NCBI GenBank assembly: GCA_002269645.1
Contig: NIVC01000013.1
Span: forward strand, 248,001-312,000
Source of the DNA: Macrostomum lignano
Lineage: Eukaryota
Length of the DNA: 64,000 nt
Direction of reading: 5' to 3'
In this document: positions 1,369 through 57,911 of the stretch, piece by piece
Position numbering within the stretch: position 1 is the stretch's first letter
How the letters are laid out: each line of letters begins with the position of its first letter
The notes under the pieces: model-generated
Databases searched by the model: none
Seen by the model: only the letters and a program-made list of their open reading frames with translations
Told to the model about the DNA's origin: nothing
Position numbers and translations under genes: made by a program

Positions 1369-1739
1369 TATTTAATAACTGTCTATTTTAATTTTTGACT
1401 GGAAAAATGTACGGTATGGCTGGGTAATGAAACATTTAGTATAAAGAATTATAATTTGTCATTATAGGTACATTTATCATTGCTAATTAATTTATTGTAA
1501 TCTATTGTAATTATTATATACAAATAAACTTCAAAAACAAAAAAGTAAAACAACTCATTGCAATGCTTAAAAAGAAATAAAACAATTTTTAATTCTCTAT
1601 TTAAATCAAGCAAACTTCGCAATTAACACTACTGATAGTAGCCATAAATAGAGAGTCCAATAGCAGTCTTTCCAAAGTCTACAAGTCAGGGTCCGATCAG
1701 GGTCCGATCAGATAAGACATGGTCGTACTCGACTTTTTA

Positions 1740-7924: not shown

Positions 7925-8817
7925 AAGGGGCGATTCTCGGGAATGTCTAGGGGCGATTATCGGGAATGTATAGGGACGATTCTCGGGAATGTCTAGGGGT
8001 GACTTTCGGGAATGTATAGGGGCGATTCTTGGGATTGTCTAGCGGCGATTCTTGGGAATGTCTAGGGGCGATTCTCGGGAATATATAGGGGCGATTCTAC
8101 GCAATGTCTAGGGGCGATTCTCGGGAATGTCTAGGGGCGATTTTCGGGAATGTCTAGGGGCGATTCTTGGAAATGTATAGGGGCTATTCTTGGGAATGCT
8201 TACGGGCGATTCTTGGAAATGTCTAGGGGCGATTCTTGGGAATGTTTAGAGGCGATTCTTGGAAATGTCTAGGGGCGATTCTTGGGAATGTCTAGGGGCG
8301 ATTCTTGGAAATGTCTAGGGGCTATTCTTGGGAATGTTTAGAGGCGATTCTTGGAAATGTCTAGGGGCGATTCTTGGGAATGTCTAGGGGCGATTCTTGG
8401 AAATTTCTAGAGGCGATTCTTGGAAATGTCTAGGGGCGATTCTTGGGAATGTCTAGGGGCGATTATTGGAAATGTCTAGGGGCTATTCTTGGGAATGTTT
8501 AGAGGCGATTCTTGGAAATGTCTAGGGGCGATTCTTGGGAATGTCTAGGGGCGATTCTTGGAAATTTCTAGAGGCGATTCTTGGAAATGTCTAGAGGCGA
8601 TTCTTGGGAATGTCTAGAGGCGATTCTTGGGAATGTCTAGAGGCGATTCTTGGGAATGTCTAGAGGCGATTCTTGGGAATGTCTAGAGGCGATTCTTGGA
8701 AATGTCTAGGGGCGATTCTTGGGAATGTCTAGGGGCGATTCTTGGGAATGTCTAGAGGCGATTCTTGGGAATGTCTAGAGGCGATTCTTGGAAATGTCTA
8801 GGGGCGATTCTTGGGAA
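7925..8817. repeat. 23-bp minisatellite (GTCTAGGGGCGATTCTTGGGAAT), array 1
   Basis: Directly visible; same family as 10360-11131. Confidence 0.95.
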
Positions 8818-13000: not shown

Positions 13001-13587
13001 TGAGGATGTGGGAGGCTGGCCCAGCAACTGAGGATGTGGGAGGCTGGCCCAGCAACTGACACTCTGGGAGGCTGGCCAGCAACTGAGGATGTGGGAGGCT
13101 GGCCCAGCAACTGAGGATCTGGGAGGCTGGTCCAGCAACTGAGGATCAGTGACCAGTGAGGCTGGTGGCCCAGCAACTGAGGATCTAGGGAATTCTAGTA
13201 CTGGATTGCTGTCTAAAACTAAGATCACAGAACAGTTCAACCAATGCCCCAGAATCTCACCATTCCATCATTGTCTTTGTCAATTTTGTCAACAATTTTT
13301 CCCAAATTCGCTTTACTCTCTTCTGGTGACATCTTATCGAACTTGCTGGAATCCTCCTTGCCCAGGAAGGCCTCGTGATCGTACTTGTGATCGTCTTCAT
13401 CCTCGTCCTCGTCGTGGTCCAAATCGCTCAGATCGTGCTGATAGACGCGGTCGCCGCTGTCCTTGTGCGAGGAATCGGCTTTGACAACGGCTGGACTGGC
13501 CTGAGCGGATGGCAAACTGACAGCCAAGGTTACGGCAATAACAGCCAGGGTCATTAGTGGCAGTACAGACGAATGGCAGTTAGACAT
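10072..13587 (-). CDS. CALU: Calumenin/reticulocalbin (CREC family EF-hand protein), 4 exons: 13587-13261, 12660-12479, 11486-11192, 10260-10072 (330 aa)
   Basis: Signal peptide; [11 protein letters not shown]; multiple EF hands; FTHPEE; [10 protein letters not shown]; exon 4 [20 protein letters not shown]...[19 protein letters not shown] ending in an ER-retention-like HEEL. All junctions GT-AG with phases 0, 2, 0. Confidence 0.93.
10360..11131. repeat. 23-bp minisatellite, array 2 (calumenin intron 3)
   Basis: Same unit and orientation as 7925-8817. Confidence 0.95.
11546..11690 (-). mobile_element. Internally deleted copy of the tRNA-derived SINE (calumenin intron 2)
   Basis: Shares TGCAACCGACAGCTCA, AAGGACACAAATTGTTC and GAATCGAACCCCCG with the 42913-43210 copy. 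Confidence 0.7.
12712..13188. repeat. 28-bp minisatellite (CCAGCCTCCCAGATCCTCAGTTGCTGGG on minus strand), calumenin intron 1
   Basis: Directly visible; same family at 26945 and 33205. Confidence 0.95.
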
Positions 13588-21719: not shown

Positions 21720-24700
21720 ATGCCTTATGAAGGAACAGTGTGTCCTTTTTGCTCAAAGCCATATACTTTGAGTCAGGTGGCACAGTATATGTGTCATTTA
21801 AAATCTCATGGTTTTAACTTGCATCATTTGAAAGTCCCAAGGTCAAGGTCACAGAGAGTAAAAATCAGGCAGCGCCTTTTAGACAATAGTAGGAACAGAA
21901 AGGTAAGACATTCAATTGAGTTTAATAATTATGCAGAATGTTTTTAATACTTACTTATCAGTAATACAGTCGTAATATACAGTTGCTAAACAGCACCCTA
22001 AAGAACTCCATTTTGAACCCTAATTCAGAGGCTACGGATTTTACATGGCGGTCCATCAGCTAGGCTTCCTGCTGTGCCAGAAGAAGATCCCCAAATTGTT
22101 GATGACAATCTAGCACAGCCAATTATTGAGTCTGTAAGCTTTGTTTGTAGGACCATTGTCAGGCATTATAAAGTGATGGAAACTACATGATAACTACTAA
22201 ACCTATTTACATATTTAAAAATACTTAGATTGATGCCGAATTGAATCTGGAGTCTGCTGCGGGTAGTAGCAGTCGAGGAGTGCAACAACAGCATAGCGAA
22301 GAGCAGCCTTCAAGTGCTCAGGCTCAATCAAGTGACTTAATTTCAAACGTGTCTCGCGATTTAGTGATTAATTTAACTCGCTGCGATGCTAGCCAGGTAA
22401 TTATATGTGCTGTTTATCGAGTAATATTTCAGATTTTCTTGCCTTATTGAAGTATCAATAGTTTTGAAAACATGGAGTGTGCAGAATTTTGCAACATCTG
22501 TAGTGTCAAGGGTGGGGTTGTGATGTTGATATTCCATTTGATTTTCAACTTTTTTACTTATGTCTCAAATTTACTAAGGTTTTGAATGAGCAAGCTGCTG
22601 ACGGCGTAGAGACTGCTCAACCGGAACCGGAAGTACCGCAGGAGCCCAATTATTACATTGCGAATCGCTTTTTTCCAATAGTTAGACTCGCACGTCTGGA
22701 GTATTTGCCTACTGATGAGGTGAGTAGTAAATGTTATATTTACTGTGTGTAGTAAAATAAGTTACTAAGTATGTTATAATTAGCTAAATAGCCATCTATA
22801 ATTTTACCTTTAGTTTTCGGCATCTGCGTCTTCATTACTGCGTATTCCTCTAGAGCGTAACGATAATGAGAGTGAAACTGAAACTTCTGCTTCTTCTGCT
22901 GCTTCTGTTGCTGCTGCTTCACCTGCGGCGACTGAAGCAGAAGAGATGGCTACATTGCCAGAGCAAATTTGCCGGCAACGCATTGCCGTGGTTAGACTGA
23001 CTCGCTTGGATAGTTTCACGTCAATGGTTTCGTCAGATAAATCGGTAAGTTACTTCGGTTTCTCGTAATTTCTCCAGTTGCCTACTTAACGTGTGTATGT
23101 TTGAGCTTTGATACGTTATTGCTAATAATGCGTTTATTGTTGTTACTTTGAATCCTGCCTCGCCCTCATTAGGTGGCGCAATCCCGGTCGACCAGATCTC
23201 AGACCCTGGACACAACGGTTGAGCGAAAGAGGTTTGTGGAAACTGGAGAGCAACAGAAAACCAGGTCATCTTGCTTGGGGCCCAGAACCCGACATCAGGA
23301 TGCTGAAGATGAAGTGCCGAGCAGGCCCAGAACCCGACATCAGGATGCTGAAGATGAAGAGCTGAGCAGGCCCAGAACCCGACATCAGGATGCTGAAGAT
23401 GAAGTGCCAAGCAGGCCCAGAACCCGACATCAGGATGCTGAAGATGAAGAGCTGAGCAGGCCCAGAACCCGACATCAGGATGCTGGAGATGAAGAACCGA
23501 GCAGGCCCAGAACCCGACATCAGGATGCTGAAGATGAAGAGCTGAGCAGGCCCAGAACCCGACATCAGGATGCTGAAGATGAAGTGCCAAGCAGGCCCAG
23601 AACCCGACATCAGGATGCTGAAGATGAAGAGCCGAGCAGGCCAAGAACCCGACATCAGGATGCTGAAGATGAAGAGCTGAGCAGGCCCAGAACCCGACAT
23701 CAGGATGCTGAAGATGAAGTGCCAAGCAGGCCCAGAACCCGACATCAGGATGCTGAAGATGAAGAGCCGAGCAGGCCCAGAACCCGACATCAGGATGCTG
23801 AAGATGAAGAGCCGAGCAGGCCCAGAACCCGACATCAGGATGCTGAAGATGAAGAGCCGAGCAGGCCCAGAACCCGACATCAGGATGCTGAAGATGAAGA
23901 GCCGAGCAGGCCCAGAACCCGACATCAGGATGCTGAAGATGAAGTGCCAAGCAGGCCCAGAACCCGACATCAGGATGCTGAAGATGAAGAGTCCGGCAGA
24001 CCAAGAACCCGGAATCGGGATACTAGAGATGGAGAGCTGAGCAGACCCAGAACCCGACATCAGGATGCTGAAGATGAGGAGTCAAGCAGTCCCAAAACCC
24101 GACACCAGGATGCTGAAGATGAAGTGCCAAGCAGGCCCAGAACCCGACATCAGGATGCTGAAGATAAAGTGCCAAGCAGGCCAAGAACCCGACATCAGGA
24201 TGCTGAAGATGAGGAGTCAAGCAGTCCCAGAACCCGACACCAGGATGCTGAAGATGAAGTGCCAAGCAGACCCAGAACCCGACATCAGGATGCTAAAGAT
24301 AAAAGGTCGAGAAGATCTAGAACCCAAGATCGGGATGCTGAAGATGAAGAGCCAAGAAGATCCAGAAACCGACATCAGGATGCTGGAGATGAAGAGCTGA
24401 GTAGACCCCGAACTCGACACCAGGATGTGGCAAATAAAAGGTTAAGAAGGTCCAGAACCCGGGATCGGGACATAGGAAATGAAGAGCTAAGATCCAGAAC
24501 CCGACATCAGGATGCTAAAGATATAGACCGGAGCAGACTTCGGACACGACACCATCTTGCTGAAAATCTAGAGTCGAAAAGGTCTAGAACCCGACATCAG
24601 ACTGGGCATGAAGAGCCGAGAAGGTCCAGAACTCGACACAATAGCCTTCATCGACATAGTTCAGCCTCGTCGTTCCAAGCAGCCCGGCAGCAGAGCAACA

Positions 24701-25233
24701 GTCCATTAGGCAGCAGTCATAGAAGCTTCCGCTGTCGCTTCTGTCACGCCCGCTTCATTCGGAACGGCGACTTGAAGGCGCACGCGCGAGTGCACAGCGG
24801 CGCAAAGCCGTTCCGTTGCGCTCAGTGCGCGAGACGCTACGCACTGGCTGGCGATCTGCAGCGGCACGTCCGCTCAGCGCACCGGCTGGACCGGCCGCAC
24901 AAGTGCAATCGTTGCGGCAAATGTTTTGCTAGAGAATTCGACCTGAGCTGTCATGCGAGAACGCACACAGGTGATAAGCCTTTCAAATGCGACCTGTGCG
25001 GCATCAGCTTTGGTCATTCCAGCACCTTGGCTAAGCACAGACGCGTGCACACTGGCGAAAAGCCGTATCGTTGCTCACAGTGTAACATGCGGTTTTCCCT
25101 AGCGACCAGTCTCACCAATCACTTGCGAATTCACAGCGGTGAGAAACCGTTTAAATGTCGATTTTGCGGCACCAAGTTCTCTCAGGTTAGCACGCTGTCT
25201 AAGCATTATCGAATGCACGCAGAGGGTAGATGA
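21720..25233 (+). CDS. C2H2 zinc-finger protein, 6 exons: 21720-21902, 22029-22133, 22229-22396, 22579-22719, 22814-23044, 23173-25233 (about 962 aa)
   Basis: All five introns GT-AG and phase 0, each exon open. N-terminal CPFC..HLKSH finger, 14-aa repeat region, six C-terminal C2H2 fingers with TGEKP-type linkers. The start may lie further upstream (acceptor at 21688). Confidence 0.8.
23278..24600 (+). repeat. 42-bp coding minisatellite (RPRTRHQDAEDEEP/LS), about 30 copies, degenerating 3'
   Basis: Directly visible in DNA and translation. Confidence 0.95.
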
Positions 25234-26309: not shown

Positions 26310-29257
<2,948 letters not shown>

Positions 29258-32982: not shown

Positions 32983-35086
32983 ATGCTGCATTTGTACATT
33001 TTGCTATTAATCTGCTTCTCAGGAGTTGCTTTGCTAGCATCTGCTATTGATCCAGGTGAAGAACTCTTTATTGTTCGGGTGGTGCTTTGCAGGTACTCTC
33101 ATTTAGCGATTAACTTATTGATGCGAACTGCATGTGCGGTCTGTGTAATGGCTGATTGAGCTATTGTTATGAATATTGACTATGATTCGAAGCAAACATA
33201 GAGGCTTCCTTGCCCAGGTCCTCCGTTGCTGGGCCAGCCTCTCAGATCCTCAGTTGCTGGGCCAGCCTCTCAGATCCTCAGTTGCTGGGCCAGCCTCCCA
33301 GATCCTCAGTTGCTGGGCCAGCCTCTCAGATCCTCAGTTGCTGGGCCAGCCTCCCAGATCTTCAGTTGCTGGGCCAGCCTCCCAGATCCTCAGTTGCTGG
33401 GCCAGCCTCCCAGATCCTCAGTTGCTGGGCCAGCCTCCCAGATCCTCAGTTGCTGGGCCAGCCTCCCAGATCCTCAGTTGCTGGGCCAGCCTCCCAGATT
33501 CTCAGTTGCTGGGCCAGCCTCCCAGATCCTCAGTTGCTGGGCCAGCCTCCCAGATCCTCCGTTGCTGGGCCAGCCTCCCAGATCCTCAGTTGCTGGGCCT
33601 TACTTGACTTAGCTGCAGGGCTGTCCCGGAGGGGACACAGCGGGAAGGCGCGAGCGCCCATTCCGCTAGTCCCTGAACGGCCGACGCGTCGCTATGGACG
33701 GAGGGTTGGCGCCGCCCAGGGAGGTCCCCCAGTGTCGCCAGCAGTTGCTGGGCCAGCCTCCCAGATTCTCAGTTGCTGGGTCAGCCTCCCAGATCCTCCG
33801 TTGCTGGGCCAGCCTCCCAGAGTGTCAGTTGCTGGGCCAGCCTCCCAGAGTGTCAGTTGCTGGGCCAGCCTCCCAGAGTGTCAGTTGCAGGGCCAGCCTC
33901 CCAGATCCTCAATTGCCTGGCCAGCCCCTCAGACCCTCAGTTGCTGGGCCAGCCTCCCAGATCCTCTGTTGCTGGGCCAGCCTCCCAGATCCCAGCTGCT
34001 AAGACACCACAACAAGCTCCTTTGGCCATGTCCTGACTCGAAACCCGGTTCAGGCGTCTCACTTCACAGTCGAGCCCCTTTCTCTCTGCAATTCCCGCAG
34101 CCAGCTGCACCCCGCAGGATCCCGCGCCGGCGAACTTCAGCGGCTTCGATCCCCGGGTCTGGGCCGGCCGCTGCGTTCGCCTTTACGTCAGCCTGTCCGC
34201 CCAGAGGTCCGACGCTCGAGTCTGCGGCACCGAAACCTACCGAGGCGACTCCGACCTGGTGTCGGCGGCCATTCACGCTGGCCTGTTCAGTGGCTACAGT
34301 TTTGCTGCGTCGACAGTTGTCGAATTCGGCCAGGCCCTGACGGCCTACAAAGGCTCCAGACGGTACGGCGTCGCCTCGAGCGACTGCGGTGACTACGCCG
34401 GCAGCTTGAGCTTCCGCTTCCCCGCCCACCAGTTCCCTTTGCCGCCCAGCGGCTCAAACGAGATCGCCTTCTACTACGGCATGCTGGCAACGCTCGGCGT
34501 TGTCGGAAACTCTGACGGCGTCGTGATCGGCGGCGCCTCTAGCAGACGCAGCGGCGACGGTCTGGGCGTCTATGCCGCTTCGTCCGACGTCGGCGCCGCA
34601 GCCGTGCACGCCGGCCTGCTGGCGCCGGGCGAGTCGCAGCCGCTGCGGGTTTGGTTCCTGCCCAGACGGCGCAGCTTCTACGGCGGCTTCGGTCGCGGCC
34701 GCGGCTCCGGCATGACGTCAAGATCGTCGACTCAGCCTGATTGGTCGATGAGCTTCCCCGAGGCGGCGCGAACTATCTGGGGCGAGGCGCCGACGAGTTT
34801 GGAGCTCTTCGGCGGCGCTGACGGAGCTGTGCTGCGTTTTCGGCTCGCCTGCTGCTCCCCTCGTCAGCTGCCGGGGGTTCGCGGCTCCGGCGTCTACCAC
34901 GTCGACTCGAATTTCGCCGCCTCGGCGCGTCACGCCGGCCTCGTGCAGCCGAACACGGAGCGAATCTTGGTGGTGGAGTTTCTTGGAAAGGCCGATTCGT
35001 TCGCTGCGGGGTTTCGCAACGGCGTCATGTCCGAGCGGTTCGGGCCGGGCTATGCCTATCGGTTTCTGGACTCGGAGCTCGCCTGA
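32983..35086 (+). CDS. Secreted protein with three tandem LCCL-like domains, 2 exons: 32983-33055, 34101-35086 (352 aa)
   Basis: Signal peptide MLHLYILLLICFSGVALLASA; donor CCAG|GT at 33056 and acceptor TTCCCGCAG at 34100, both phase 1. Motifs VCGTETYRGDSDLVSAAIHAG, GLGVYAASSDVGAAAVHAG, VRGSGVYHVDSNFAASARHAG fit LCCL GxxxYxxxSxxxxAAxHAG. Confidence 0.75.
33205..33990. repeat. 28-bp minisatellite (two blocks, 33205-33600 and 33740-33990) in the LCCL-gene intron
   Basis: Same unit as 26945-27415. Confidence 0.93.
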
Positions 35087-35179: not shown

Positions 35180-36030
35180 CACCCTGATCCCAACCCTAAT
35201 CCCAACCCTGATCCCAACCCTGATTCTAACCCTGATCCCAACCCTGATCCCAACCCTGATTCTAACCCTGATCCCAACCCTGATCCCAACCCTGATCCCA
35301 ACCCTAATCCCAACCCTAATCCCAACCCTGATCCCAATCCTAATCCCAATCCTAATCACAACAATCCCAACCCTGATCCCAACCCTGATCCCAGCCCTGA
35401 TCCCAACCCTGATCTTAAACCTGATCCCAAACCTGATCCCAAACCTGATCCCAAACCTGATCCCAACCCTGATCCCAAACCTGATCCCAAACCTGATCCC
35501 AACCCCACTCCCAACCCTGATCCCAACCCCACTCCCAACCCTGATCCCAACCCCACTCCCAACCCCACTCCCAACCCTGATCTTAAACCTGATCCCAACC
35601 CTGATCCCAAACCTAATCCCAACCCCACTCCCAACCCTGATCCTAACCCTAATCCCAACCCCACTCACAACCCTGATCCCAAACCTAATCCCAACCCCAC
35701 TCCCAACCCTGATCCTAACCCTAATCCCAACCCCACTCCCAACACTGATCCTAACCCTAATCCCAACCCCACTCCCAACACTGATCTCAACCCTGATCCC
35801 AACCCCACTCACAACCCTGATCCCAACCCTAATCCCAACCCCACTCCCAACCCTGATCCCAAACCTAATCCCAACCCCACTCCCAACCCTGATCCTAACC
35901 CTAATCCCAACCCCACTCCCAACGCTGATCCTAACCCTAATCCCAACCCCACTCCCAACACTGATCCCAACCCTAATCCCAACCCCACTCCCAACACTGA
36001 TCCCAACCCTAATCCCAACCCTGATCCTAA
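35180..36030. repeat. Hexamer-based repeat (CCCAAC/CCTGAT/CCTAAT/CCCACT), telomere-like variant
   Basis: Directly visible. Confidence 0.92.
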
Positions 36031-36484
36031 AGCTAATTAAAATGCGAATCAAAGTGCCAATAAAGGTCTAAAATACGCAAAAACATTCCCCCCAATAGCA
36101 CCATCGCAAAGAGCAAGAATTTTCTACCGTAAAAAAATTGTAAATCGTTTTCGATTCTGTTAAAGAAGTGCATAATCGGGAAAAATGATTTGAACATAAC
36201 TCCGCTGCTAAGACAACAATAAAGTGATGAAGCTTTGCCAACTAAATTTGGCCATCAAGCGGCATAATACTCATTTTTCAATGGCCGCTCCCGTCAGGCT
36301 TCGATGGGCAAGGAGCAGTCAGCATTTGCCTTGCAGATACACCGAACTGAGCTACGGCAAAACGGTATTCAACCTGCTCACTCGAGCGAGTTAAAGCTCA
36401 GTACTCAATGCTGCTAATTCAAGCCATGATTTCCATTGCTGGAATATTCCACTTTCTAGTTTTTTTGTTGCTGGATGTGTAGTG

Positions 36485-37505
36485 TAGTCAGGATGATGCA
36501 GGGAGGTGTAGTCAGGATTTGATGCAGGGAGGTGTAGTCAGGATTTGATGCAGGGAGGTGTAGTCAGGATTTGATGCAGGGTGGTGTAGTCAGCATTTGA
36601 TGCAGGGAGGTGTAGTCAGGATGATGCAGGGAGGTGTAGTCAGGATTTGATGCAGGGAGGTGTAGTCAGGATTTGATGCAGGGTGGTGTAGTCAGGATGA
36701 TGCAGGGAGGTGTAGTCAGGATTTGATGCAGGGAGGTGTAGTCAGGATTTGATGCAGGGAGGTGTAGTCAGGATTTGATGCAGGGAGGTGTAGTCAGGAT
36801 TTGATGCAGGGAGGTGTAGTCAGGATGATGCAGGGAGGTGTAGTCAGGATGATGCAGGGAGGTGTAGTCAGGATTTGATGCAGGGAGGTGTAGTCAGGAT
36901 GATGCAGGGAGGTGTAGTCAGGATTTGATGCAGGGAGGTGTAGTCAGGATGATGCAGGGAGGTGTAGTCAGGATGATGCAGGGAGGTGTAGTCAGGATTT
37001 GATGCAGGGAGGTGTAGTCAGGATGATGCAGGGAGGTGTAGTCAGGATTTGATGCAGGGAGGTGTAGTCAGGATTTGATGCAGGGAGGTGTAGTCAGGAT
37101 TTGATGCAGGGAGGTGTAGTCAGGATGATGCAGGGAGGTGTAGTCAGGATGATGCAGGGAGGTGTAGTCAGGATTTGATGCAGGGAGGTGTAGTCAGGAT
37201 GATGCAGGGAGGTGTAGTCAGGATTTGATGCAGGGAGGTGTAGTCAGGATGATGCAGGGAGGTGTAGTCAGGATGATGCAGGGAGGTGTAGTCAGGATTT
37301 GATGCAGGGAGGTGTAGTCAGGATGATGCAGGGAGGTGTAGTCAGGATTTGATGCAGGGAGGTGTAGTCAGGATGATGCAGGGAGGTGTAGTCAGGATTT
37401 GATGCAGGGAGGTGTAGTCAGGATTTGATGCAGGGAGGTGTAGTCAGGATGATGCAGGGAGGTGTAGTCAGGATGATGCAGGGAGGTGTAGTCAGGATGA
37501 TGCAG
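36485..37505. repeat. 24/26-bp minisatellite (GATGCAGGGAGGTGTAGTCAGGAT[TT])
   Basis: Directly visible. Confidence 0.95.
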
Positions 37506-38103
37506 GTACTCGTAGTTATGGGGATAATATACAGGGAGTTATGAGAATGATGCAAGGAGTTATGGGGCTGATGCAGGGAGTTATGAGGGTGATGCAGGGA
37601 GTCATGAAGATGATGCAGGGAGTCATGAAGATGATGCAGGGAGTCATGAGTGTGGAAGCAGGTAGTGATACAAATGCAGTCATAACAATGTGCCTATAAA
37701 GGCTGATGGCAAGGGAAAATACAATTGCATTTTCATCTGAAAAATTCGCAAAGCCACATGCTTTGGTTGAGGTTCATGATTGCGGGTATCTGGCCATCTC
37801 TGGTTTGAGCCATAGAGCGACCTGTAGTTGCAATTCGCCCACACAATTATCCAGTTCAATTGGTTATGATAGCCTGACTCAGCTCTAGCAATTAACAATA
37901 AAGATATTAATAGATTGTTATTTTTATTAAGCCATTTCACCATGACTGGAGCTCGAGAGCTCACTCAGCCCCCGGACCAGTGTACTTCCATTAATTTCAA
38001 TTGAAACATTAATAGAGAAACGACCACGGTTCGGGATCAAAGTCAGTCTGTCATGTTTGCGGTGACGGCTCTCGTGACTCATCAACGATCCCCGCGCTCC
38101 TCG

Positions 38104-38550
38104 TTAGCCAAATCGCAGGGTAGAGATTGGCGGTAGCTCGTTGCGCTTCTTGATTGCGGCAGCTTGCAGACGTTTTAGCAGTCTCCTGGTCCATGGGGAG
38201 CCCGCGATGTCGCCTGCGGGTGATTGCAGAAATTACTAATGCAATGCTGGCAGCAATTAATGTGACAGTTCAATGTTTTTGTACATGCCCATTACCATTT
38301 CTACGAGCCAACAGGTCGAGGTAAAGCTGCTCTACATTGTCGTCAGCATCTTTTAGCTCTGGAAATGTTTGCAGGTGTTGATTTATTGTGTTACGTTAAG
38401 CTTAATTTCATAAAAAAAATACGACACGGTCTCACCTGCGTCGCTAATTGAGTCCGAGTTCACTATCGAGTTAGCGTGCGCTGGCGTTGTCAAGGAGAGC
38501 AGCAGCAGCAGCAGCAGGCCGGAACTTGTCAGACAGAAGCAGGTATTCAT
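38104..38550 (-). CDS. RFamide neuropeptide precursor, 2 exons: 38550-38436, 38213-38104 (74 aa)
   Basis: MNTCFCLTSSGLLLLLLLSLTTPAHA-NSIVNSDSISDAGDIAGSPWTRRLLKR-LQAAAIKKR-NELPPISTLRFG-stop. Donor G|GTGAG at 38435 and acceptor CCCGCAG at 38214, both phase 1. Minus-strand AATAAA near 37925. Confidence 0.8.
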
Positions 38551-39827: not shown

Positions 39828-40128
39828 GGGGTTGTAGCCTAGTGGTTAGAGCGTCGGACTTACGAATTGAAGGTCGGGGGTTCGATTCCCGATCCCACTG
39901 GAACAATTTGTGTCCTTGAGCAAGGCGCTTAACTTTGCATTGCTTCAGTTCACTTAGCTGTAAAATGGGTACCCCAGCATTATAGCTGGGGTAATTGAAG
40001 GTGTGTATGGCGACCCCCCAGTCCTTGGACTGAACAGCCGTATGCAGTCTTCAGATGCGCCACGAAATAGCTGCGGCTGAGCTGTCGGTTGCACATCTGG
40101 CCCAATTTGGGGTAGGTGTAATCAATTA
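39828..40128 (+). mobile_element. tRNA-derived SINE
   Basis: A box TAGCCTAGTGG, B box GGTTCGATTCCC, then a GTGTCCTTGAGCAAGGCGCTTAAC core and a 3' tail ending GGTGTAATCAATTA; paralog at 42913. Confidence 0.85.
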
Positions 40129-42912: not shown

Positions 42913-43210
42913 TAATTGATTACACCTGCGCGGGCAAGTCTGCAACCGACAGCTCAGCCGCAGCTATTTGCGCGGCGCACCTGAAGGCTGCGTACGGCTG
43001 TTCAGTCCAAGGACTGGGGGGTTCGCCACACACACCCTCAATTACCCCAGCTAATGCTGGCATCCATTTTACAGCTGGATGAACTGAAGCAATGCAGAGT
43101 TAAGTTTCTTGCTCAAGGACACAAATTGTTCGGAGTGGGATCGGGAATCGAACCCCCGGCCGTGAAGTCGTGAGTCCGACGACGCTCTAACCACTAGGCT
43201 ACAGCCCCCC
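42913..43210 (-). mobile_element. tRNA-derived SINE, second full copy
   Basis: Reverse complement aligns along its length to 39828-40128. Confidence 0.85.
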
Positions 43211-44760: not shown

Positions 44761-46812
44761 ATGAGCAGCAGAAAAGCCAACTCGGGGCAGAAGGTCGAGC
44801 AAAATTATGAAAGCAAGGAGAGTCCAGTGGTAAGTGAGGTCGAGGAGAACGAAGAGTTCAAGGACAACCCGGATGAGGTGGCGTGTAACTGGCACCCCAA
44901 GTGCCAACCCCAGTGCTGCCAGTGCTTCGCCCGACCCTCCTGCCTGCTGCTGTGGCTCTGCCTGAGCAGTTTTACTCAAGGCCTGGTCGTGAACGGCTTT
45001 GTCAACTCGGTGCTAACAACCCTCGAGCTGCGATACGATATGACTTCATCCGAGAGCGGACTCATCGCCTCCATGTACGACATCGGGAGTGTGCTCTGCC
45101 TGGTCCCAGTCACCTACATCGGACACCGGTACCGGCGAAGTCGCCTCATCTCCATCGGGCTGCTCATCATGAGCGTCGGATCGTTTGTCTTCACCATTCC
45201 ACAGTTCACCACCGACGCCTACAACTACCAGAGTCCGGTGTCGCCTCTGTGCTACCTGTCCGGCAAGGTCTATCCGGATTTCTGTACCAAGCAGACTCTC
45301 AACAACTACAAGTTCGTGTTTTGGCTCGGACAGTTCCTGCACGGAGTGGGCGCGTCTCCGCTGTACACACTGGCCGTGGCGTACCTTGACGACAACCTGA
45401 CTGTGCAGCAGTCGGGCGCGTTCCTGGGTGCTTACTACATGATGAGCTTGATCGGTCCCGCCATGGGCTACCTTCTTGGCGGCATATTCCTTAATATCTA
45501 CGTCGAGCTGGGCGTGACGCCGTCAGACCTCACGCCAAGCAACACCAGTCTCTGGGTTGGCGCTTGGTGGGTCGGCTTTCTCATTTCTGGAACTCTGTCT
45601 CTTATTATTGTGGTTCCTTTGTTTGGCTTTCCAAAACTTTTCCCCGGATCGGCTCGCATTCAGCACGAGAAAAAACAGGAGACGCATGGCAACTCCGAAG
45701 CGAAATGTGCCGAAATGCAGGAATTAAACGTTAAAGACTTCTGCCCCTCGGTTGGCGTTATCCTGAGCAACCCAGTGTTTGTGTTCATCTCCTTCAGCGG
45801 TGCCGCGGACGCTATCTTAGTAGCCGGACTGTCAACCTTTGGGCCGAAAGTGTTGCAGACTCTGTTCATGGTGAGCGCGAGCACGGCCACCTTCACCATC
45901 GGCCTAGTGTCCGTGCCGAGCGCTGCCATCGGGTTGCTAGTCGGCGGCTTAGTGATTCGCTTCAGCAACTTGCCAGTCCGTAGTCTACTCTGGATGTGCG
46001 TTGGGGTTGCGGCAGTTGACGTGCTATTCGGACTCGGGCTGCTGGCCAAGTGCGACCTGCAGAAGTTTGCAGGTGTCAATCAAAATTACCCGCTTACGCC
46101 AAACCAGTCCAACTCGCTGAATGCTACATGCAACATGAACTGCCACTGTCAGGAGAGCAAGTTCATGTACAGTCCGGTGTGCGGCGCAGACTCCGTCATC
46201 TATTACTCGCCCTGCTACGCAGGCTGTCAAAGCAATGGAACGATGATCAATGGCGCAAATTACTATGCAAACTGCACTTGCATTACCGGACAGATTACAG
46301 CAAACAATTACAACTTCTCAGCTATGGAGGGCACTTGCAAGGACGCCAGCTGCAACAAGATGCCCATTGTGCTAGTAACCATTGGCTTCTTTCTATTTGG
46401 AATTTTCTTCATTTCGATACCCACGCTGCAGTGCACAATGCGAGTCATACCAGCTAGGCTAAAGGACTTCGGCCTGGGCCTGCAGTGGGTGATCCTGAGA
46501 CTGTTCGGAAGCATCCCGGGACCCCTGGTGCTGGGAAAACTGATTGACACCACCTGCAGCCTGTGGACCGGCGGCTGCGGTCATCAGGGCTCGTGCAGCT
46601 TCTACAACGGCGAGAGCTTCTGGGCGATGGTGCTTGGCTTTGCGGCCGTGCTGAAAGCCCTGGAGATTCTGTTCCTGATCCTCGCCGCCGCGCTGTACGT
46701 TCCGCCTGACCAGGTCATTCAGGTTGACGTTGAAATCGAGACCAAACCTGACGGTCAGTTCGCTGGCCCCGAGGCGCACGCCAACGAAGCTTTCAAACCG
46801 GACATTGCCTGA
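44761..46812 (+). CDS. Organic anion transporting polypeptide (SLCO/OATP, OATP4-like), paralog A, intronless CDS, 683 aa
   Basis: QGLVVNGF, LELRYDMTSSESGLIASMYDIG, FLHGVGASPLYTLAVAYLDDN, WVGAWWVGF, Kazal-like CNMNCHC...PVCGAD...YYSPCYAGC, GSIPGPLVLGKLIDTTC. Confidence 0.95.
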   Translation: MSSRKANSGQKVEQNYESKESPVVSEVEENEEFKDNPDEVACNWHPKCQPQCCQCFARPSCLLLWLCLSSFTQGLVVNGFVNSVLTTLELRYDMTSSESGLIASMYDIGSVLCLVPVTYIGHRYRRSRLISIGLLIMSVGSFVFTIPQFTTDAYNYQSPVSPLCYLSGKVYPDFCTKQTLNNYKFVFWLGQFLHGVGASPLYTLAVAYLDDNLTVQQSGAFLGAYYMMSLIGPAMGYLLGGIFLNIYVELGVTPSDLTPSNTSLWVGAWWVGFLISGTLSLIIVVPLFGFPKLFPGSARIQHEKKQETHGNSEAKCAEMQELNVKDFCPSVGVILSNPVFVFISFSGAADAILVAGLSTFGPKVLQTLFMVSASTATFTIGLVSVPSAAIGLLVGGLVIRFSNLPVRSLLWMCVGVAAVDVLFGLGLLAKCDLQKFAGVNQNYPLTPNQSNSLNATCNMNCHCQESKFMYSPVCGADSVIYYSPCYAGCQSNGTMINGANYYANCTCITGQITANNYNFSAMEGTCKDASCNKMPIVLVTIGFFLFGIFFISIPTLQCTMRVIPARLKDFGLGLQWVILRLFGSIPGPLVLGKLIDTTCSLWTGGCGHQGSCSFYNGESFWAMVLGFAAVLKALEILFLILAAALYVPPDQVIQVDVEIETKPDGQFAGPEAHANEAFKPDIA

Positions 46813-47715: not shown

Positions 47716-49749
47716 ATGAGGCCAGCAACGCCATCTCAGGTCCAAGAGGTGGAGGAACCTAAACAAGTCGCTGCGAAAAGTTCTCCGAAAACTGATGATG
47801 TGTTGAAAAGCGACAGCAATGAGCTCAATGACGACCCGGATGAGGTGGCGTGTAACTGGCACCCCAAGTGCCAACCACAGTGCTGCCAGTGCTTCGCCCG
47901 ACCCTCCTGCCTGCTGCTGTGGCTCTGCCTGAGCAGTTTTACTCAAGGCCTGGTCGTGAACGGCTTTGTCAATTCGGTGCTAACAACCCTCGAGCTGCGA
48001 TACGATATGACTTCATCCGAGAGCGGACTCATCGCCTCCATGTACGACATCGGGAGTGTGCTCTGCCTGGTCCCAGTCACCTACATCGGACACCGGTACC
48101 GGCGGAGTCGCCTCATCTCCATCGGGCTGCTCACCATGAGCGTCGGATCGTTTGTCTTCACCATTCCACAGTTCACCACCGACGCCTACAACTACCAGAG
48201 TCCGGTGTCGCCTCTGTGCTACCTGTCCGGCAAGGTCTATCCGGATTTCTGTACCAAGCAGACTCTCAACAACTACAAGTTCGTGTTTTGGCTCGGACAG
48301 TTCCTGCACGGAGTGGGCGCGTCTCCGCTGTACACACTGGCCGTGGCGTACCTTGACGACAACCTGACTGTGCAGCAGTCGGGCGCGTTCCTGGGTGCTT
48401 ACTACATGATGAGCTTGATCGGTCCCGCCATGGGCTACCTTCTTGGCGGCATATTCCTTAATATCTACGTCGAGCTGGGCGTGACGCCGTCTGATATCAG
48501 CCCTAAGAATAATAACCTGTGGGTTGGCGCCTGGTGGATCGGCTTTTTTCTGTCTGGAACCCTGTCACTGGTATCTGTCGTACCCATTTTTGGGTTTCCT
48601 AAAAGATTTTCCCACTCGACAAGTTCTCAGACGCAGAGTACACACGAATCGCCTAGAGACATCGTTGGCGCAGAAAATGCAGCAACGCAGATCAGTGCCA
48701 AGCATTTCTGGAGTTCAATTGTTACCCTTCTGAAAAATGCTACATTTGTGTTCCTGTCATTCTCCGGCGCAATGCAGTATGTCATAATGACTGGATTATC
48801 CACTTTCGGTCCAAAAATCCTGCAAATTTTGTTCTACTTAACAAAAAGCTCTTCTACAATCACTATGGGCCTCGTGACCGTGCCCGCAGCCGCCTTTGGC
48901 GTCATGACAGGCGGTTTATTGATTAGATTTACTAAGTTTTCCGTACAACGACTTCTGTGGTTGAGCTTCATCGTGGCCTGTGTGGATTTGATACTCGGAC
49001 TCGGGCTGCTGGCCAAGTGCAATCCGCAGAAGTTTGCAGGTGTCAATCAAAATTACCCGCTTACGCCAAACCAGTCCAACTCGCTGAATGCTACGTGCAA
49101 CATGAACTGCCACTGTCAGGAGAGCAAGTTCATGTACAGTCCGGTGTGCGGCGCAGACTCCGTCATCTATTACTCGCCCTGCTACGCAGGCTGTCAAAGC
49201 AATGGCACGATGATCAATGGCGGAAAGTACTATGCAGACTGCACTTGCATTACCGGACAGATTGCAATCGACGGAAGCGATCAAAAGTTCTCGGCAGTGG
49301 AGGGAGCGTGTATAAAAAACGCGTGTCACAAGTTGCAGATTCTGCTCAGCATGCTGTTTTTGTTCATTTTTGTACTATTCTCAACCTCGGTGCCAATTCT
49401 GCACTGCACGATGCGAGTCATACCGGCTACACTCAAAGACTTCGGCCTTGGCCTGCAGTGGGTGATCCTGAGACTGTTCGGCAGCATCCCGGGACCGCCC
49501 TTGATGGGAAAACTGATTGACACCACCTGCAGCCTGTGGACCGGCGGCTGCGGTCATCAGGGCTCGTGCAGCTTCTACAACGGCGAGAGCTTCTGGCTGA
49601 TTGTGATCGCCTTTGCCGGCGTACTCAAGGTGCTGGAAGTCGCCCTGATGGGACTGGCCGCTTTTTTCTACTACGCGCCGCCTGACGAGCCGGAGACGGT
49701 CACGATAAAAACTGTTGAGTCCACCAGTGACAGACAGTCAATTGAGTAA
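47716..49749 (+). CDS. SLCO/OATP paralog B, intronless CDS, 677 aa
   Basis: Same motifs as paralog A; tandem offset about 2967 bp. Confidence 0.95.
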   Translation: MRPATPSQVQEVEEPKQVAAKSSPKTDDVLKSDSNELNDDPDEVACNWHPKCQPQCCQCFARPSCLLLWLCLSSFTQGLVVNGFVNSVLTTLELRYDMTSSESGLIASMYDIGSVLCLVPVTYIGHRYRRSRLISIGLLTMSVGSFVFTIPQFTTDAYNYQSPVSPLCYLSGKVYPDFCTKQTLNNYKFVFWLGQFLHGVGASPLYTLAVAYLDDNLTVQQSGAFLGAYYMMSLIGPAMGYLLGGIFLNIYVELGVTPSDISPKNNNLWVGAWWIGFFLSGTLSLVSVVPIFGFPKRFSHSTSSQTQSTHESPRDIVGAENAATQISAKHFWSSIVTLLKNATFVFLSFSGAMQYVIMTGLSTFGPKILQILFYLTKSSSTITMGLVTVPAAAFGVMTGGLLIRFTKFSVQRLLWLSFIVACVDLILGLGLLAKCNPQKFAGVNQNYPLTPNQSNSLNATCNMNCHCQESKFMYSPVCGADSVIYYSPCYAGCQSNGTMINGGKYYADCTCITGQIAIDGSDQKFSAVEGACIKNACHKLQILLSMLFLFIFVLFSTSVPILHCTMRVIPATLKDFGLGLQWVILRLFGSIPGPPLMGKLIDTTCSLWTGGCGHQGSCSFYNGESFWLIVIAFAGVLKVLEVALMGLAAFFYYAPPDEPETVTIKTVESTSDRQSIE

Positions 49750-56565: not shown

Positions 56566-57911
56566 CGAGGTTTATTCAAAAAGTTTTTTTTGGTCCTTTG
56601 GCATTTATTTTTAGAAAGTGTTGTAAACAGAATTTTAGCGATTTTACCAAGTTATGTCTATGGCCTAAATGTTCCTAGGGTTTTAAGTCTCAGTTTGCAA
56701 CTATGTTAGAGCAGCGAACATTTCTATCAGCTGCCACTCAATTTCTTGGCCATGGCTGAATCATTTTCAAAGCAAGACGTTCGAAGCTTGATGAAGTTTC
56801 AGTTTCTGCAAGGAAAAAAGCCATCGGATATGTTTAGAGAGCTTCAGCAAGTGCTTGGCAACTGTGCACCAACTGAGCAGACAGTTCGAAAATGGTACCA
56901 GCTGTTCGCTGAGGGAAGAGAGAGCGTTGAGGACAATGGCCGCTCTGGAAGGCCGATGACTGCAACCAAAGAGACTGTTGTGAAGAAAGTGCAAGAGCTC
57001 TTGGATGATGATCGGCGACGGACTTGCAAAGAGTTGGCAGAAGACGTTGGTGTGTCAATAGGAAGCGTCCACACTATTCTGACTGAGCGTCTTCTCCTAC
57101 AGACAAAGTTCTGCAAGTGGGTGCCACACCTGCTGACAGGTGAGCAAAAGATGCAGCGAACTCTGGCTTCAAGCAGCCACCTGCGTTGGTTCCATCAAGA
57201 AGGGGAGGATTTTCTATCAAGAATTGTTGCTGGAGACGAGACGTGGGTTTACAGCTGGGATCCTGAGACAAAGGCCCAGTTTGCCGAATGGCTTCCAGCA
57301 CATTCTCCAAGACCTCAGAAGGCCATCAGGAAGCAGGGCGCAATAAAGATCATGCATGTCATGTTTTTTGATTCCCAAGGAATCCTGCTGAACTGGGCAG
57401 TCCCACAAGGAACCACCGTCAATGGGGACTACTACAAGTGGATTCTGCAGGAGAAGCTGCGCCCAGCAATACAAAAGAAGCGCCCTGGTCTGCTGGAATC
57501 TGGCGTGATCCTGCTGCACGACAATGCGCCAGCACATCGCAAGCACAACGTCGTGGAACTCCTGAGCAAATGGGGCTGGGAAGTGCTCTAACATCCACCC
57601 TATTTGCCTGATTTGTCGCCGTGCGACTTCTTCTTATTTCCATCTGTAAAGAAGCACCTTTGGGGCATTCGATTTGACAGCGTCGAGCACATCGAAGCTG
57701 CATGCAATCAAGCTGTTTGCCAAACGGACGCGAATGGTGTGAGTTCCAGAATTAGAGGCCTGGTAAATCGCTGGCAGAAGTGCAAAGACATTGGTGGTGA
57801 ATATGTTGAGTGACAGAATCATGTTAAGCAATCTAACAGTGTTTTCATAGTTCCAGTTGTTTTGTGTTCAGTTTTGTAGGGCACCGAAAAGAACTTTTTG
57901 AATACACCTCG
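56566..57911 (+). mobile_element. Full-length mariner (Tc1/mariner, D,D34D) transposon, 1346 bp, irritans-like TIR
   Basis: TIR CGAGGTTTATTCAAAAAGTT / AACTTTTTGAATACACCTCG with one mismatch; TA duplication at 56564-56565 and 57912-57913. Confidence 0.95.
56752..57813 (+). pseudogene. Mariner transposase with a single in-frame TAA at 57589-57591
   Basis: WVPHLLT, GDETWVY, LLHDNAPAH, WEVL*HPPYLPDLSPCDFFLF; the same frame resumes after the stop. Confidence 0.92.

What the first reader, a model, noticed from the sequence alone, without database searches (positions are those of the whole stretch)
38104..38550. Hidden two-exon RFamide neuropeptide gene: predicted NELPPISTLRF-amide
Seen: neither exon appears in the ORF track, yet splicing gives a 74-aa precursor with a 26-residue signal peptide, KR and KKR sites, and a terminal RFG-stop. 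Established: basic-site cleavage plus C-terminal Gly yields an amidated peptide. I do not recognise this sequence as FMRFamide, NPF (RPRFa) or sNPF (LRLRFa), so it may be an undescribed single-copy RFamide.
Basis: partly seen in the sequence, partly recalled or inferred. Interest (0 to 1): 0.82.

Follow-up and report, generated by a model that had tools for sequence, protein, structure and literature searches.

The report
Flatworm RFamide-type neuropeptide precursor gene
This is a real, transcribed small gene of the flatworm Macrostomum lignano, with three exons rather than two and already in GenBank as a "hypothetical protein", that looks like a precursor for one amidated RFamide peptide, which makes it a plausible but ordinary and untested addition to flatworm neuropeptides.

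Summary
The window is Macrostomum lignano scaffold NIVC01000013.1.

The gene model is incomplete. A 63-nt in-frame middle exon (38358-38296) has canonical AG/GT borders. The three-exon product (95 aa) is 100% identical to GenBank BOX15_Mlig031658g1, whose annotation was derived from transcripts. The gene is therefore not hidden, only functionally unannotated.

A second genomic copy is about 95% identical and keeps all splice sites. It differs by 7 synonymous and 2 non-synonymous changes (dN/dS about 0.10, P = 0.002). Four of the silent changes lie inside NELPPISTLRFG, so the peptide frame is under purifying selection.

The layout matches flatworm single-peptide "npp" prohormones: signal peptide, acidic spacer, basic sites, KKR, an 11-mer, then Gly-stop. 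The LRFamide ending fits the sNPF/LFRFamide motif but fails the NPF and FaRP criteria.

No homolog was found in an exhaustive search. That result says little, because no close relative of this species is in the database. Expression site, processing, amidation and receptor are all untested. I rate it a new member of a known kind, of modest interest.

The parts
38436..38550 (-). Coding exon 1 (115 nt, codons 1-38 plus the first base of codon 39). The ATG is at 38550-38548.
   Evidence: Followed by the donor GTGAGA. Matches the start of GenBank protein P0001.
38473..38550 (-). Predicted signal peptide, codons 1-26 (MNTCFCLTSSGLLLLLLLSLTTPAHA), with cleavage expected between A26 and N27.
   Evidence: Read directly from the sequence: Leu7 hydrophobic core, Pro at -4, Ala at -3 and -1. 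Hydrophobicity profile. No SignalP was available. The only two amino-acid differences from the second copy fall here (G11S, L12V).
38359..38435 (-). Intron 1 (77 nt, GT...AG, phase 1).
   Evidence: Borders are conserved in the second copy, which has 3 substitutions here.
38296..38358 (-). It encodes ELKDADDNVEQLYLDLLARRN plus one base, which is part of the acidic spacer and the first RR site (codons 57-58 at 38305-38300).
   Evidence: One search shows the in-frame AG|...|GT borders. The exon is needed to reproduce the 95-aa GenBank protein at 100% identity. In the second copy it has one synonymous change and intact borders.
38214..38295 (-). Intron 2 (82 nt, GT...AG, phase 1, splitting the Gly60 codon).
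   Evidence: The second copy has 5 substitutions here and conserved borders.
38104..38213 (-). Coding exon 3 (110 nt including the TAA stop at 38106-38104). It encodes DIAGSPWT-RR-LL-KR-LQAAAI-KKR-NELPPISTLRF-G.
   Evidence: All 5 substitutions against the second copy are synonymous in this frame and non-synonymous in the other two frames.
38143..38151 (-). KKR processing site (codons 81-83) immediately before the predicted peptide.
   Evidence: Sequence. Identical in the second copy. Cleavage is inferred from general prohormone-convertase specificity. A PC2 homolog is expressed in the M. lignano nervous system (PMC4490696).
38107..38142 (-). Predicted bioactive peptide plus the amidation-donor Gly: NELPPISTLRF-G (codons 84-95). 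The expected product is NELPPISTLRF-NH2, [M+H]+ 1285.726.
   Evidence: There are 4 synonymous and 0 non-synonymous differences from the second copy within these 12 codons.
37923..37928 (-). AATAAA polyadenylation signal candidate, 176 nt after the stop codon.
   Evidence: by pattern match only. The 3' end was not verified experimentally here.

Best explanation
A small three-exon gene of Macrostomum lignano (BOX15_Mlig031658g1, minus strand 38550-38104) encodes a 95-aa secreted prohormone.

Proposed mechanism:
1. The 26-aa signal peptide is removed.
2. Prohormone convertase (PC2-type) cuts at basic sites, most confidently at RR57-58 and KKR81-83. Both are followed by Asn.
3. Carboxypeptidase trims the basic residues.
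4. The C-terminal Gly95 is converted to an amide.
5. The result is one copy of NELPPISTLRF-NH2, an RFamide with an sNPF/LFRFamide-like LRFamide ending. It would most likely act as a neuropeptide on a G-protein-coupled receptor.

Shown here: gene structure, identity to a transcript-derived annotation, and purifying selection on the reading frame.
Inferred: secretion, cleavage, amidation, neuronal expression and receptor action.
For: - The gene is real and spliced as three exons. The 95-aa conceptual product is 100% identical to GenBank P0001. The GenBank annotation of assembly Mlig_3_7 was built only from RNA-seq and de novo transcripts plus TransDecoder (PMC5730564).
- The frame is under purifying selection. 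Against the second copy (L002) there are 7 synonymous and 2 non-synonymous substitutions. dN/dS is about 0.10 and binomial P = 0.0018. Both replacements are conservative and lie in the signal-peptide core. All 5 exon-3 changes are silent only in the peptide frame, and 4 of them are inside NELPPISTLRFG. All four splice borders are conserved.
- The architecture matches documented flatworm npp precursors, which are 85-100 aa long with a signal peptide, acidic spacer, dibasic site, one short peptide, then Gly and stop. Examples are T. crassiceps Npp-1, -15.2 and -44 (PMC11196405 supplement) and Smed-npp-3, which ends KRAIVLTRFG (PMC2953531 Table S5).
- The mature region has no cysteines, and AlphaFold2 gives no confident globular fold (pLDDT 60.5, pTM 0.29; the C-terminal 11-mer is unstructured). 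This suits a processed precursor.
- A PC2 homolog is expressed in the M. lignano nervous system, its knock-down was lethal within two weeks, and GYIRFamide-type staining of neurons is described in this species (PMC4490696).
- LRFamide fits the published sNPF motif M/T/L/F-RF(W)amide (PMC6389622). STLRF differs by one residue from Aplysia STLFRFamide (PMC4208409).
Against: - There is no direct evidence of neuronal expression, of the mature peptide or of amidation.
- The RFG-stop motif with an upstream dibasic site is not rare enough to be significant alone.
- The cluster RR-LL-KR-LQAAAI-KKR would release odd 2- and 6-residue fragments if fully cleaved. The real cleavage pattern may therefore differ.
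- The signal peptide lacks a positively charged n-region.
- The second copy carries a 1-nt deletion in a CCCC run that would remove the peptide. If that deletion is real, one copy is dispensable.
Confidence: 0.6

Rival explanations
1. The gene makes a small secreted product, but not a neuropeptide. It could be a gland, epidermal, seminal-fluid or host-defence peptide in which the cationic stretch WTRRLLKRLQAAAIKKR is the active part. That would resemble frog-skin antimicrobial precursors, which have a signal peptide, an acidic propiece and a cationic amidated peptide. Under this reading the RFG ending is incidental.
For: - The acidic propiece (net charge -7) is followed by a segment with net charge +6.
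- A helix is predicted for residues 66-83.
- 11-residue windows at positions 63-70 have a hydrophobic moment of 0.6-0.7.
- The RFG-stop motif alone is compatible with chance.
- There are no expression data.
Against: - Over the whole 18-residue basic helix the hydrophobic moment is no higher than in shuffled sequences (0.36 against 0.31, P = 0.35).
- The basic residues come as classic convertase sites (RR, KR, KKR) rather than being spread along one helix face.
- The 12 C-terminal codons carry 4 silent and 0 replacement changes, which argues that this end is the constrained part.
- The overall layout equals known flatworm npp prohormones.
Confidence: 0.18
2. The gene is a neuropeptide precursor, but the active product is long. 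Cleavage occurs only at RR57-58, giving the 36-residue NGDIAGSPWTRRLLKRLQAAAIKKRNELPPISTLRF-NH2. This would be a helical NPF- or PrRP-like RFamide whose internal basic pairs are protected within a helix.
For: - The length (36 aa) is in the NPF range of 36-40.
- NPF peptides do contain uncleaved internal basic pairs, for example Tcr Npp-20.3 ...FRRYLQRL....
- RR|LL and KR|LQ have a hydrophobic residue at P1'. From my recollection of published insect cleavage rules, not checked here, this disfavours cleavage.
- A phase-1 intron splits codon 2 of this long peptide. That resembles the phase-1 intron near the N-terminus of PrRP-type peptides (PMC7314547).
- A helix is predicted for residues 66-83.
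Against: - The RXRF motif is absent, with Thr at position -4.
- There is no intron in the Arg codon of the terminal RF, which is the hallmark of NPY/NPF genes.
- It lacks the Tyr/Pro pattern of NPFs, and local alignment to five cestode NPFs gives z <= 0.4.
- KKR followed by Asn is a strong convertase site.
- The phase-1 intron match is weak evidence, since one intron phase in three matches by chance.
Confidence: 0.12
3. There is no functional protein. The annotated ORF is a fortuitous reading frame in a transcribed, repeat-rich region.
For: - The ORF is short and has no Pfam domain.
- It has no homologs outside the species.
- It is surrounded by minisatellite arrays.
- The C-terminal motif is within chance.
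Against: - 7 of 9 coding differences between the copies are synonymous (P = 0.0018), and they are frame-specific.
- All splice borders and the frame are conserved in both copies.
- A signal peptide, basic sites and Gly-stop occur together in the order expected of a prohormone.
Confidence: 0.04

Closest known systems
Flatworm single-peptide "npp" prohormones (McVeigh 2009, Collins 2010 and Koziol 2016 nomenclature), for example Smed-npp-3 (AIVLTRFamide) and Taenia Npp-1, Npp-15.2 and Npp-44
   Same: - Precursor of 85-100 aa.
- N-terminal signal peptide, then an acidic, partly helical spacer.
- A basic cleavage site, one short peptide at the extreme C-terminus, then Gly and the stop codon.
- Smed-npp-3 also ends in ...RFG-stop.
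   Different: - There is no detectable sequence similarity to any of the 30 precursors I could obtain (best z = 2.3; BLASTP found nothing against Smed-npp-3).
- The peptide sequence NELPPISTLRF is not among them.
- It has an extra cluster of basic sites (RR, KR, KKR within 15 residues).
- I could not read McVeigh 2009 or Koziol 2016, so I cannot say whether the gene is already listed there.
sNPF / molluscan LFRFamide family (for example Aplysia STLFRFamide, Lymnaea GTLLRF-amide, insect xPxLRLRFamide)
   Same: - A short peptide (11 aa) ending in LRFamide, inside the published motif M/T/L/F-RF(W)amide.
- The last five residues, STLRF, differ from Aplysia STLFRF by one missing Phe.
- Pro lies 7 residues from the end, as in insect sNPF (my own knowledge of those sequences).
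   Different: - It lacks Arg at position -4, which is present in arthropod sNPF.
- It has one copy per precursor, whereas protostome sNPF and LFRFamide precursors usually carry several.
- No precursor homology was detected.
- Receptor pairing is unknown.
Neuropeptide F (NPY/NPF family) of flatworms
   Same: - A C-terminal RFamide that is also the end of the precursor.
- A 36-aa amidated product is possible if only RR57-58 is cut.
   Different: - TLRF rather than RXRF.
- No phase-2 intron in the Arg codon.
- No Tyr/Pro scaffold.
- No alignment to cestode NPFs.
Flatworm FMRFamide-related peptides (YIRFamide, GYIRFamide, GNFFRFamide; Smed spp-11 and npp-4)
   Same: An amidated RF C-terminus produced from a small prohormone.
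   Different: The FaRP definition requires an aromatic residue at position -4 and a hydrophobic one at -3. Here -4 is Thr. There is no precursor similarity to Tcr Npp-4 (z = 1.2).

Membership tests
Amidated neuropeptide prohormone (generic) | N-terminal signal peptide | tested here: met
   By inspection and hydrophobicity profile only: Leu7 core, Pro at -4, A-x-A then N. No SignalP was available.
Amidated neuropeptide prohormone (generic) | Basic convertase site directly before the peptide, and Gly directly after it as amide donor | tested here: met
   KKR(81-83)-NELPPISTLRF-G95-stop. Identical in the second copy.
Amidated neuropeptide prohormone (generic) | Expression in neurons or endocrine cells, and detection of the mature amidated peptide | not testable with these tools
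   No RNA-seq, in situ or peptidomic data were reachable. The gene ID was not found in any searchable paper.
Amidated neuropeptide prohormone (generic) | Conservation concentrated on the peptide and its cleavage sites | tested here: inconclusive
   Only an intragenomic duplicate was available: 0 replacements in the 69 mature-region residues and 4 silent changes in the peptide. No other species could be compared.
NPY/NPF family | C-terminal RXRF/Y-amide | tested here: not met
   The C-terminus is S-T-L-R-F-G, with Thr at position -4. Definition from PMC6389622.
NPY/NPF family | Intron between the 2nd and 3rd base of the Arg codon of the terminal RF/RY | tested here: not met
   Exon 3 is uninterrupted from codon 60 to the stop. 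Hallmark as described in PMC7314547.
NPY/NPF family | Peptide length of 36-40 aa | tested here: inconclusive
   A 36-aa product arises only if three internal basic sites stay uncut.
sNPF / LFRFamide family | Short peptide with C-terminal M/T/L/F-RF(W)-amide | tested here: met
   A predicted 11-mer ending in LRF-amide. Motif from PMC6389622. Compare STLFRFamide.
sNPF / LFRFamide family | Precursor homology, or several peptide copies per precursor | tested here: not met
   There is one copy per precursor. Exhaustive phmmer found no homolog outside M. lignano.
sNPF / LFRFamide family | Activates an sNPF/PrRP-type receptor | not testable with these tools
   This needs a receptor assay.
FMRFamide-related peptides (FaRPs, strict sense) | X1-X2-RFamide with X1 aromatic and X2 hydrophobic | tested here: not met
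   X1 is Thr and X2 is Leu. Definition in PMC4208409.
Named flatworm npp families | Recognisable sequence similarity of the peptide or precursor to a named npp family | tested here: not met
   Smith-Waterman with shuffling against 29 T. crassiceps npp precursors and Smed-npp-3 gave a maximum z of 2.3. BLASTP found nothing.

The most novel reading that the evidence does not exclude
NELPPISTLRFamide is the ligand of a previously unrecognised, macrostomid- or flatworm-restricted RFamide signalling system. Alternatively, it is the highly diverged single-copy sNPF/LFRFamide-type ligand of an early-branching flatworm. That would give a genetically tractable entry point (RNAi and transgenesis exist in M. 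lignano) into how RFamide systems diversified in Platyhelminthes.
Probability: 0.25. Interest if true: 0.45.

Novelty: new member of a known kind. Interest (0 to 1): 0.3.

Why it matters
If confirmed, it would add one RFamide neuropeptide to the poorly catalogued peptide repertoire of Macrostomum lignano. This regeneration and reproduction model has working RNAi and transgenesis, so the function and receptor of a single-copy peptide gene could be tested directly. RFamides are strong modulators of flatworm muscle, and flatworm peptide GPCRs are being studied as anthelmintic targets. However, in silico discovery of lineage-restricted flatworm prohormones is routine, with dozens of npp genes already known. 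The gene model is already public and nothing about its architecture is unusual, so the finding is useful annotation rather than a surprise.

Tried and rejected
- Pfam scan of the precursor: no family.
- Word-indexed homology search: only the gene itself and its duplicate.
- Exhaustive phmmer of the mature region against 1.84 billion representatives: only the M. lignano cluster.
  - A control search with the neighbouring 683-aa OATP gene found nothing closer than 59% and 49% M. lignano paralogs and then about 40% molluscs.
  - The database therefore holds no close relative of this species, and the lack of orthologs is uninformative.
- Exact-protein look-up for transcript contigs: only the genome scaffolds were returned and no RNA-derived contig, so junctions could not be checked directly.
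- Literature searches for STLRF, TLRFamide and the gene IDs: nothing relevant.
- McVeigh 2009 and Koziol 2016 are not held.
- Comparison with 30 flatworm npp precursors: no significant similarity.
- NPF reading: rejected on motif and intron position.
- FaRP reading: rejected on motif.
- Antimicrobial or amphipathic-helix reading: the hydrophobic moment is not above shuffled sequences.
- AlphaFold2 on the single sequence: low confidence and no fold, so no fold search was run.
- Rfam and tRNA scans of the window: nothing related to the gene.

Full report
**Origin of the window.**
- The three-exon conceptual protein from the finding is 100% identical over its full length to GenBank [quoted passage not shown] (P0001).
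- The encoding contig is NIVC01000013.1 of assembly GCA_002269645.1 (Mlig_3_7).
- The locus returned there matches window 41550-35104 at 100%.
- The window is therefore free-living flatworm DNA. It is rich in minisatellites (36 TRF rows), as published for this genome (PMC5730564).

**Check of the observation.**
- On the minus strand the ATG is at 38550. Exon 1 ends at 38436 before GTGAGA, and an acceptor CCGCAG precedes 38213.
- The frame runs to ...KKRNELPPISTLRFG-TAA at 38104.
- Exon 1 sits in a 57-aa ORF and exon 3 has no start codon, which explains their absence from an ORF list with a 60-aa cutoff.
It is 63 nt long, has TTTCCAG|AG and ATG|GTAATG borders, and is phase-1 compatible on both sides.
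- Only the three-exon CDS reproduces the 95-aa GenBank protein.
- The GenBank annotation of Mlig_3_7 was produced solely from transcript evidence: StringTie/TACO assemblies of RNA-seq, a mapped de novo transcriptome, and TransDecoder ORFs (PMC5730564). The three-exon structure therefore has indirect RNA support.
- I could not inspect reads, and no RNA-derived contig was returned by the exact-protein look-up.
- The exon-skipped 74-aa form remains possible as a minor isoform. It would not change the predicted peptide.

**Is it more than chance?**
- The C-terminal motif alone is not. RFG-stop occurs once in the six-frame translation of the window against 0.9 expected, or 0.16 expected with a dibasic pair within 25 residues upstream.
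- The decisive evidence is comparative. A second copy (BOX15_Mlig006573g2, P0002, on NIVC01000381.1, locus L002) lies in a collinear duplicated block, with L002 1210-8486 corresponding to window 40199-33742. This is consistent with the known genome redundancy of the sequenced line.
- The two copies are about 93-95% identical across exons, introns and flanks.
- Within the CDS there are 9 substitutions, 7 synonymous and 2 non-synonymous (G11S and L12V, both in the signal-peptide core). This gives pS 0.094, pN 0.0095 and a ratio of about 0.10. The binomial P is 0.0018 against the neutral expectation of 26% synonymous.
- All five exon-3 substitutions are silent in the annotated frame and replacements in both other frames. 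Four of them fall inside the 12 codons NELPPISTLRFG.
- All four splice borders are intact in the second copy.
- The second copy has one C fewer in a CCCC run (GGCTCCCCATGG against GGCTCCCATGG), which is why it is annotated as a truncated 71-aa protein. This could be a homopolymer error of a long-read assembly or a very recent lesion, and I cannot tell which.

**Anatomy of the product.**

| Residues | Sequence | Feature |
|---|---|---|
| 1-26 | MNTCFCLTSSGLLLLLLLSLTTPAHA | signal peptide |
| 27-56 | NSIVNSDSISDAELKDADDNVEQLYLDLLA | acidic spacer, net charge -7 |
| 57-58 | RR | basic site |
| 59-68 | NGDIAGSPWT | |
| 69-70 | RR | basic site |
| 71-72 | LL | |
| 73-74 | KR | basic site |
| 75-80 | LQAAAI | |
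| 81-83 | KKR | basic site |
| 84-94 | NELPPISTLRF | predicted peptide |
| 95 | G, then stop | amidation donor |

- The mature region has no cysteine.
- A single-sequence AlphaFold2 model is of low confidence (pLDDT 60.5, pTM 0.29). It shows only two helices (37-58 and 66-83) and an unstructured C-terminal 11-mer. That is compatible with a processed precursor rather than a folded protein.
- An AATAAA lies 176 nt after the stop.

**Most likely mechanism.**
- The layout is that of known flatworm single-peptide prohormones. These are 85-100 aa long, with a signal peptide, acidic spacer, basic site, one short peptide at the very end, then Gly and stop.
  - Cestode examples are Npp-1 (...KRGFVRLG), Npp-15.2 (...KRAQFLRIG) and Npp-44 (...KRTYARPAIRMG) (PMC11196405 supplement).
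  - The planarian example is Smed-npp-3 (...KRAIVLTRFG), whose amidated peptides were detected by mass spectrometry (PMC2953531).
- M. lignano has a PC2 homolog expressed in the nervous system whose knock-down stunted worms and killed them within two weeks. GYIRFamide-type staining of neurons is also described in this species (PMC4490696).
- I therefore propose signal-peptide removal, convertase cleavage, carboxypeptidase trimming and amidation of Gly95, giving NELPPISTLRF-NH2 (monoisotopic 1284.719 Da), which would act as a neuropeptide.
- Gene structure and selective constraint are shown. Secretion, cleavage, amidation, cell type and receptor are inferred.
- Which internal sites are cut is uncertain. 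RR|N and KKR|N look favourable. RR|L and KR|L have a hydrophobic P1' residue, which as I recall from published insect cleavage rules disfavours cleavage. This is my recollection and was not tested.

**Rivals.**
- *Non-neural secreted cationic peptide.* The acidic-propiece and cationic-segment arrangement, and high local hydrophobic moments (0.6-0.7 for 11-mers at positions 63-70), make this possible. Over the whole basic helix, however, the moment is not above shuffles (P = 0.35). The basic residues form classic convertase pairs, and the constraint is visible on the terminal peptide.
- *36-residue amidated product.* This form, NGDIAGSPWT...STLRF-NH2, would be NPF- or PrRP-like in length, and a phase-1 intron splits its second codon. 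Against this, the NPF hallmarks are absent (see below) and KKR-Asn is a strong site.
- *Non-coding or chance ORF.* This is contradicted by the frame-specific synonymous pattern.

**Comparison with known families.**
- *NPF/NPY.* The family requires RXRF/Y-amide and typically 36-40 aa (PMC6389622). Its genes have an intron between bases 2 and 3 of the Arg codon of the terminal RF/RY (PMC7314547). Here position -4 is Thr and exon 3 is uninterrupted, so it is not a member.
- *FaRPs.* These require an aromatic residue at -4 (PMC4208409). Here it is Thr, so it is not a member.
- *sNPF/LFRFamide.* The published motif M/T/L/F-RF(W)-amide is met. STLRF is one residue short of Aplysia STLFRFamide. However, there is one copy instead of several, no Arg at -4 and no detectable precursor homology. 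It may work like an sNPF-type peptide, but membership cannot be claimed without a receptor.
- *Named flatworm npp families.* There is no significant similarity to 29 Taenia npp precursors or to Smed-npp-3 (max z 2.3; BLASTP found nothing). The comparison set is incomplete.

**Homology searches.**
- Neither the word-indexed search nor an exhaustive phmmer of residues 27-95 against 1.84 billion representatives found anything outside M. lignano.
- As a control, the neighbouring 683-aa OATP transporter finds M. lignano paralogs at 59% and 49% and then molluscs at about 40%, with no other Macrostomum or flatworm in between.
- The database therefore contains no species close enough for a 95-aa prohormone to be recognisable.

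**Novelty and verdict.**
- The gene model is public, and its reading as an RFamide prohormone appears nowhere in the literature I could search.
- It is best classed as a new member of a known kind: a flatworm npp-type, single-peptide RFamide prohormone.
- Interest is modest (0.3). The gene is plausible and testable in a tractable model, but architecturally ordinary and unvalidated.

Noticed in passing
window 44761-46812 and 47716-49749 (+): Two tandem, apparently intronless, full-length OATP/SLCO4A1-like transporter ORFs (683 and 677 aa; Pfam OATP E about 1e-149 and 1e-143). No identical protein is in the protein database. The best M. lignano hits are only 59% and 49% identical, so these two genes may be missing from the GenBank annotation, or may be retrocopies.
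   Followed up: partly
L002 5001-5446 (NIVC01000381.1), corresponding to window 38550-38104: The second copy of the prohormone gene has a 1-nt deletion in a CCCC homopolymer of exon 3. This truncates the annotated protein to 71 aa, yet every other exon-3 difference is synonymous. It is probably an assembly indel, or otherwise a very young pseudogene.
   Followed up: partly
window 34259-35086 (+); L002 7141-9300 (-): An LCCL-domain coding exon lies next to the prohormone gene and is syntenic with an LCCL gene beside the second copy. The region between the two genes in the window is filled with 12-bp and 26-bp tandem arrays (35181-36027 and 36482-37506).
   Followed up: partly
window 23173-25233 (+): A 686-aa ORF has C-terminal C2H2 zinc fingers. 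Its N-terminal two-thirds coincide with a 45-bp x 30 tandem array (23279-24638), which would be a 15-residue protein repeat if it is coding.
   Followed up: no
window 39828-39897 (+); related copies at 42913-43208 and L002 1210-1641: A tRNA-like sequence (Rfam tRNA 35.9 bits, not called by ARAGORN) is embedded in a repeated element of about 440 bp. It looks like a tRNA-derived SINE rather than a tRNA gene.
   Followed up: partly
window 1719-3044 (+), 56746-57591 (+): Mobile-element remnants: an integrase-core (rve) ORF fused to a 24-bp tandem array, and a Mos1/mariner-type transposase ORF (HTH_48 plus Transposase_1).
   Followed up: no
window 26391-27068 and 28670-29251 (+); 5837-6403 (-): Exons of a pyridine nucleotide-disulphide oxidoreductase (FAD-binding and dimerisation domains) and of an XAP5-domain protein.
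   Followed up: no
window 12712-13147, 26945-27416, 33213-34000; 7926-8817 and 10359-11133: The same 28-bp minisatellite unit recurs at three separate sites in both orientations, and the same 23-bp unit recurs at two sites. More than 20 arrays with 12-59-bp units are spread over the 64 kb.
   Followed up: no
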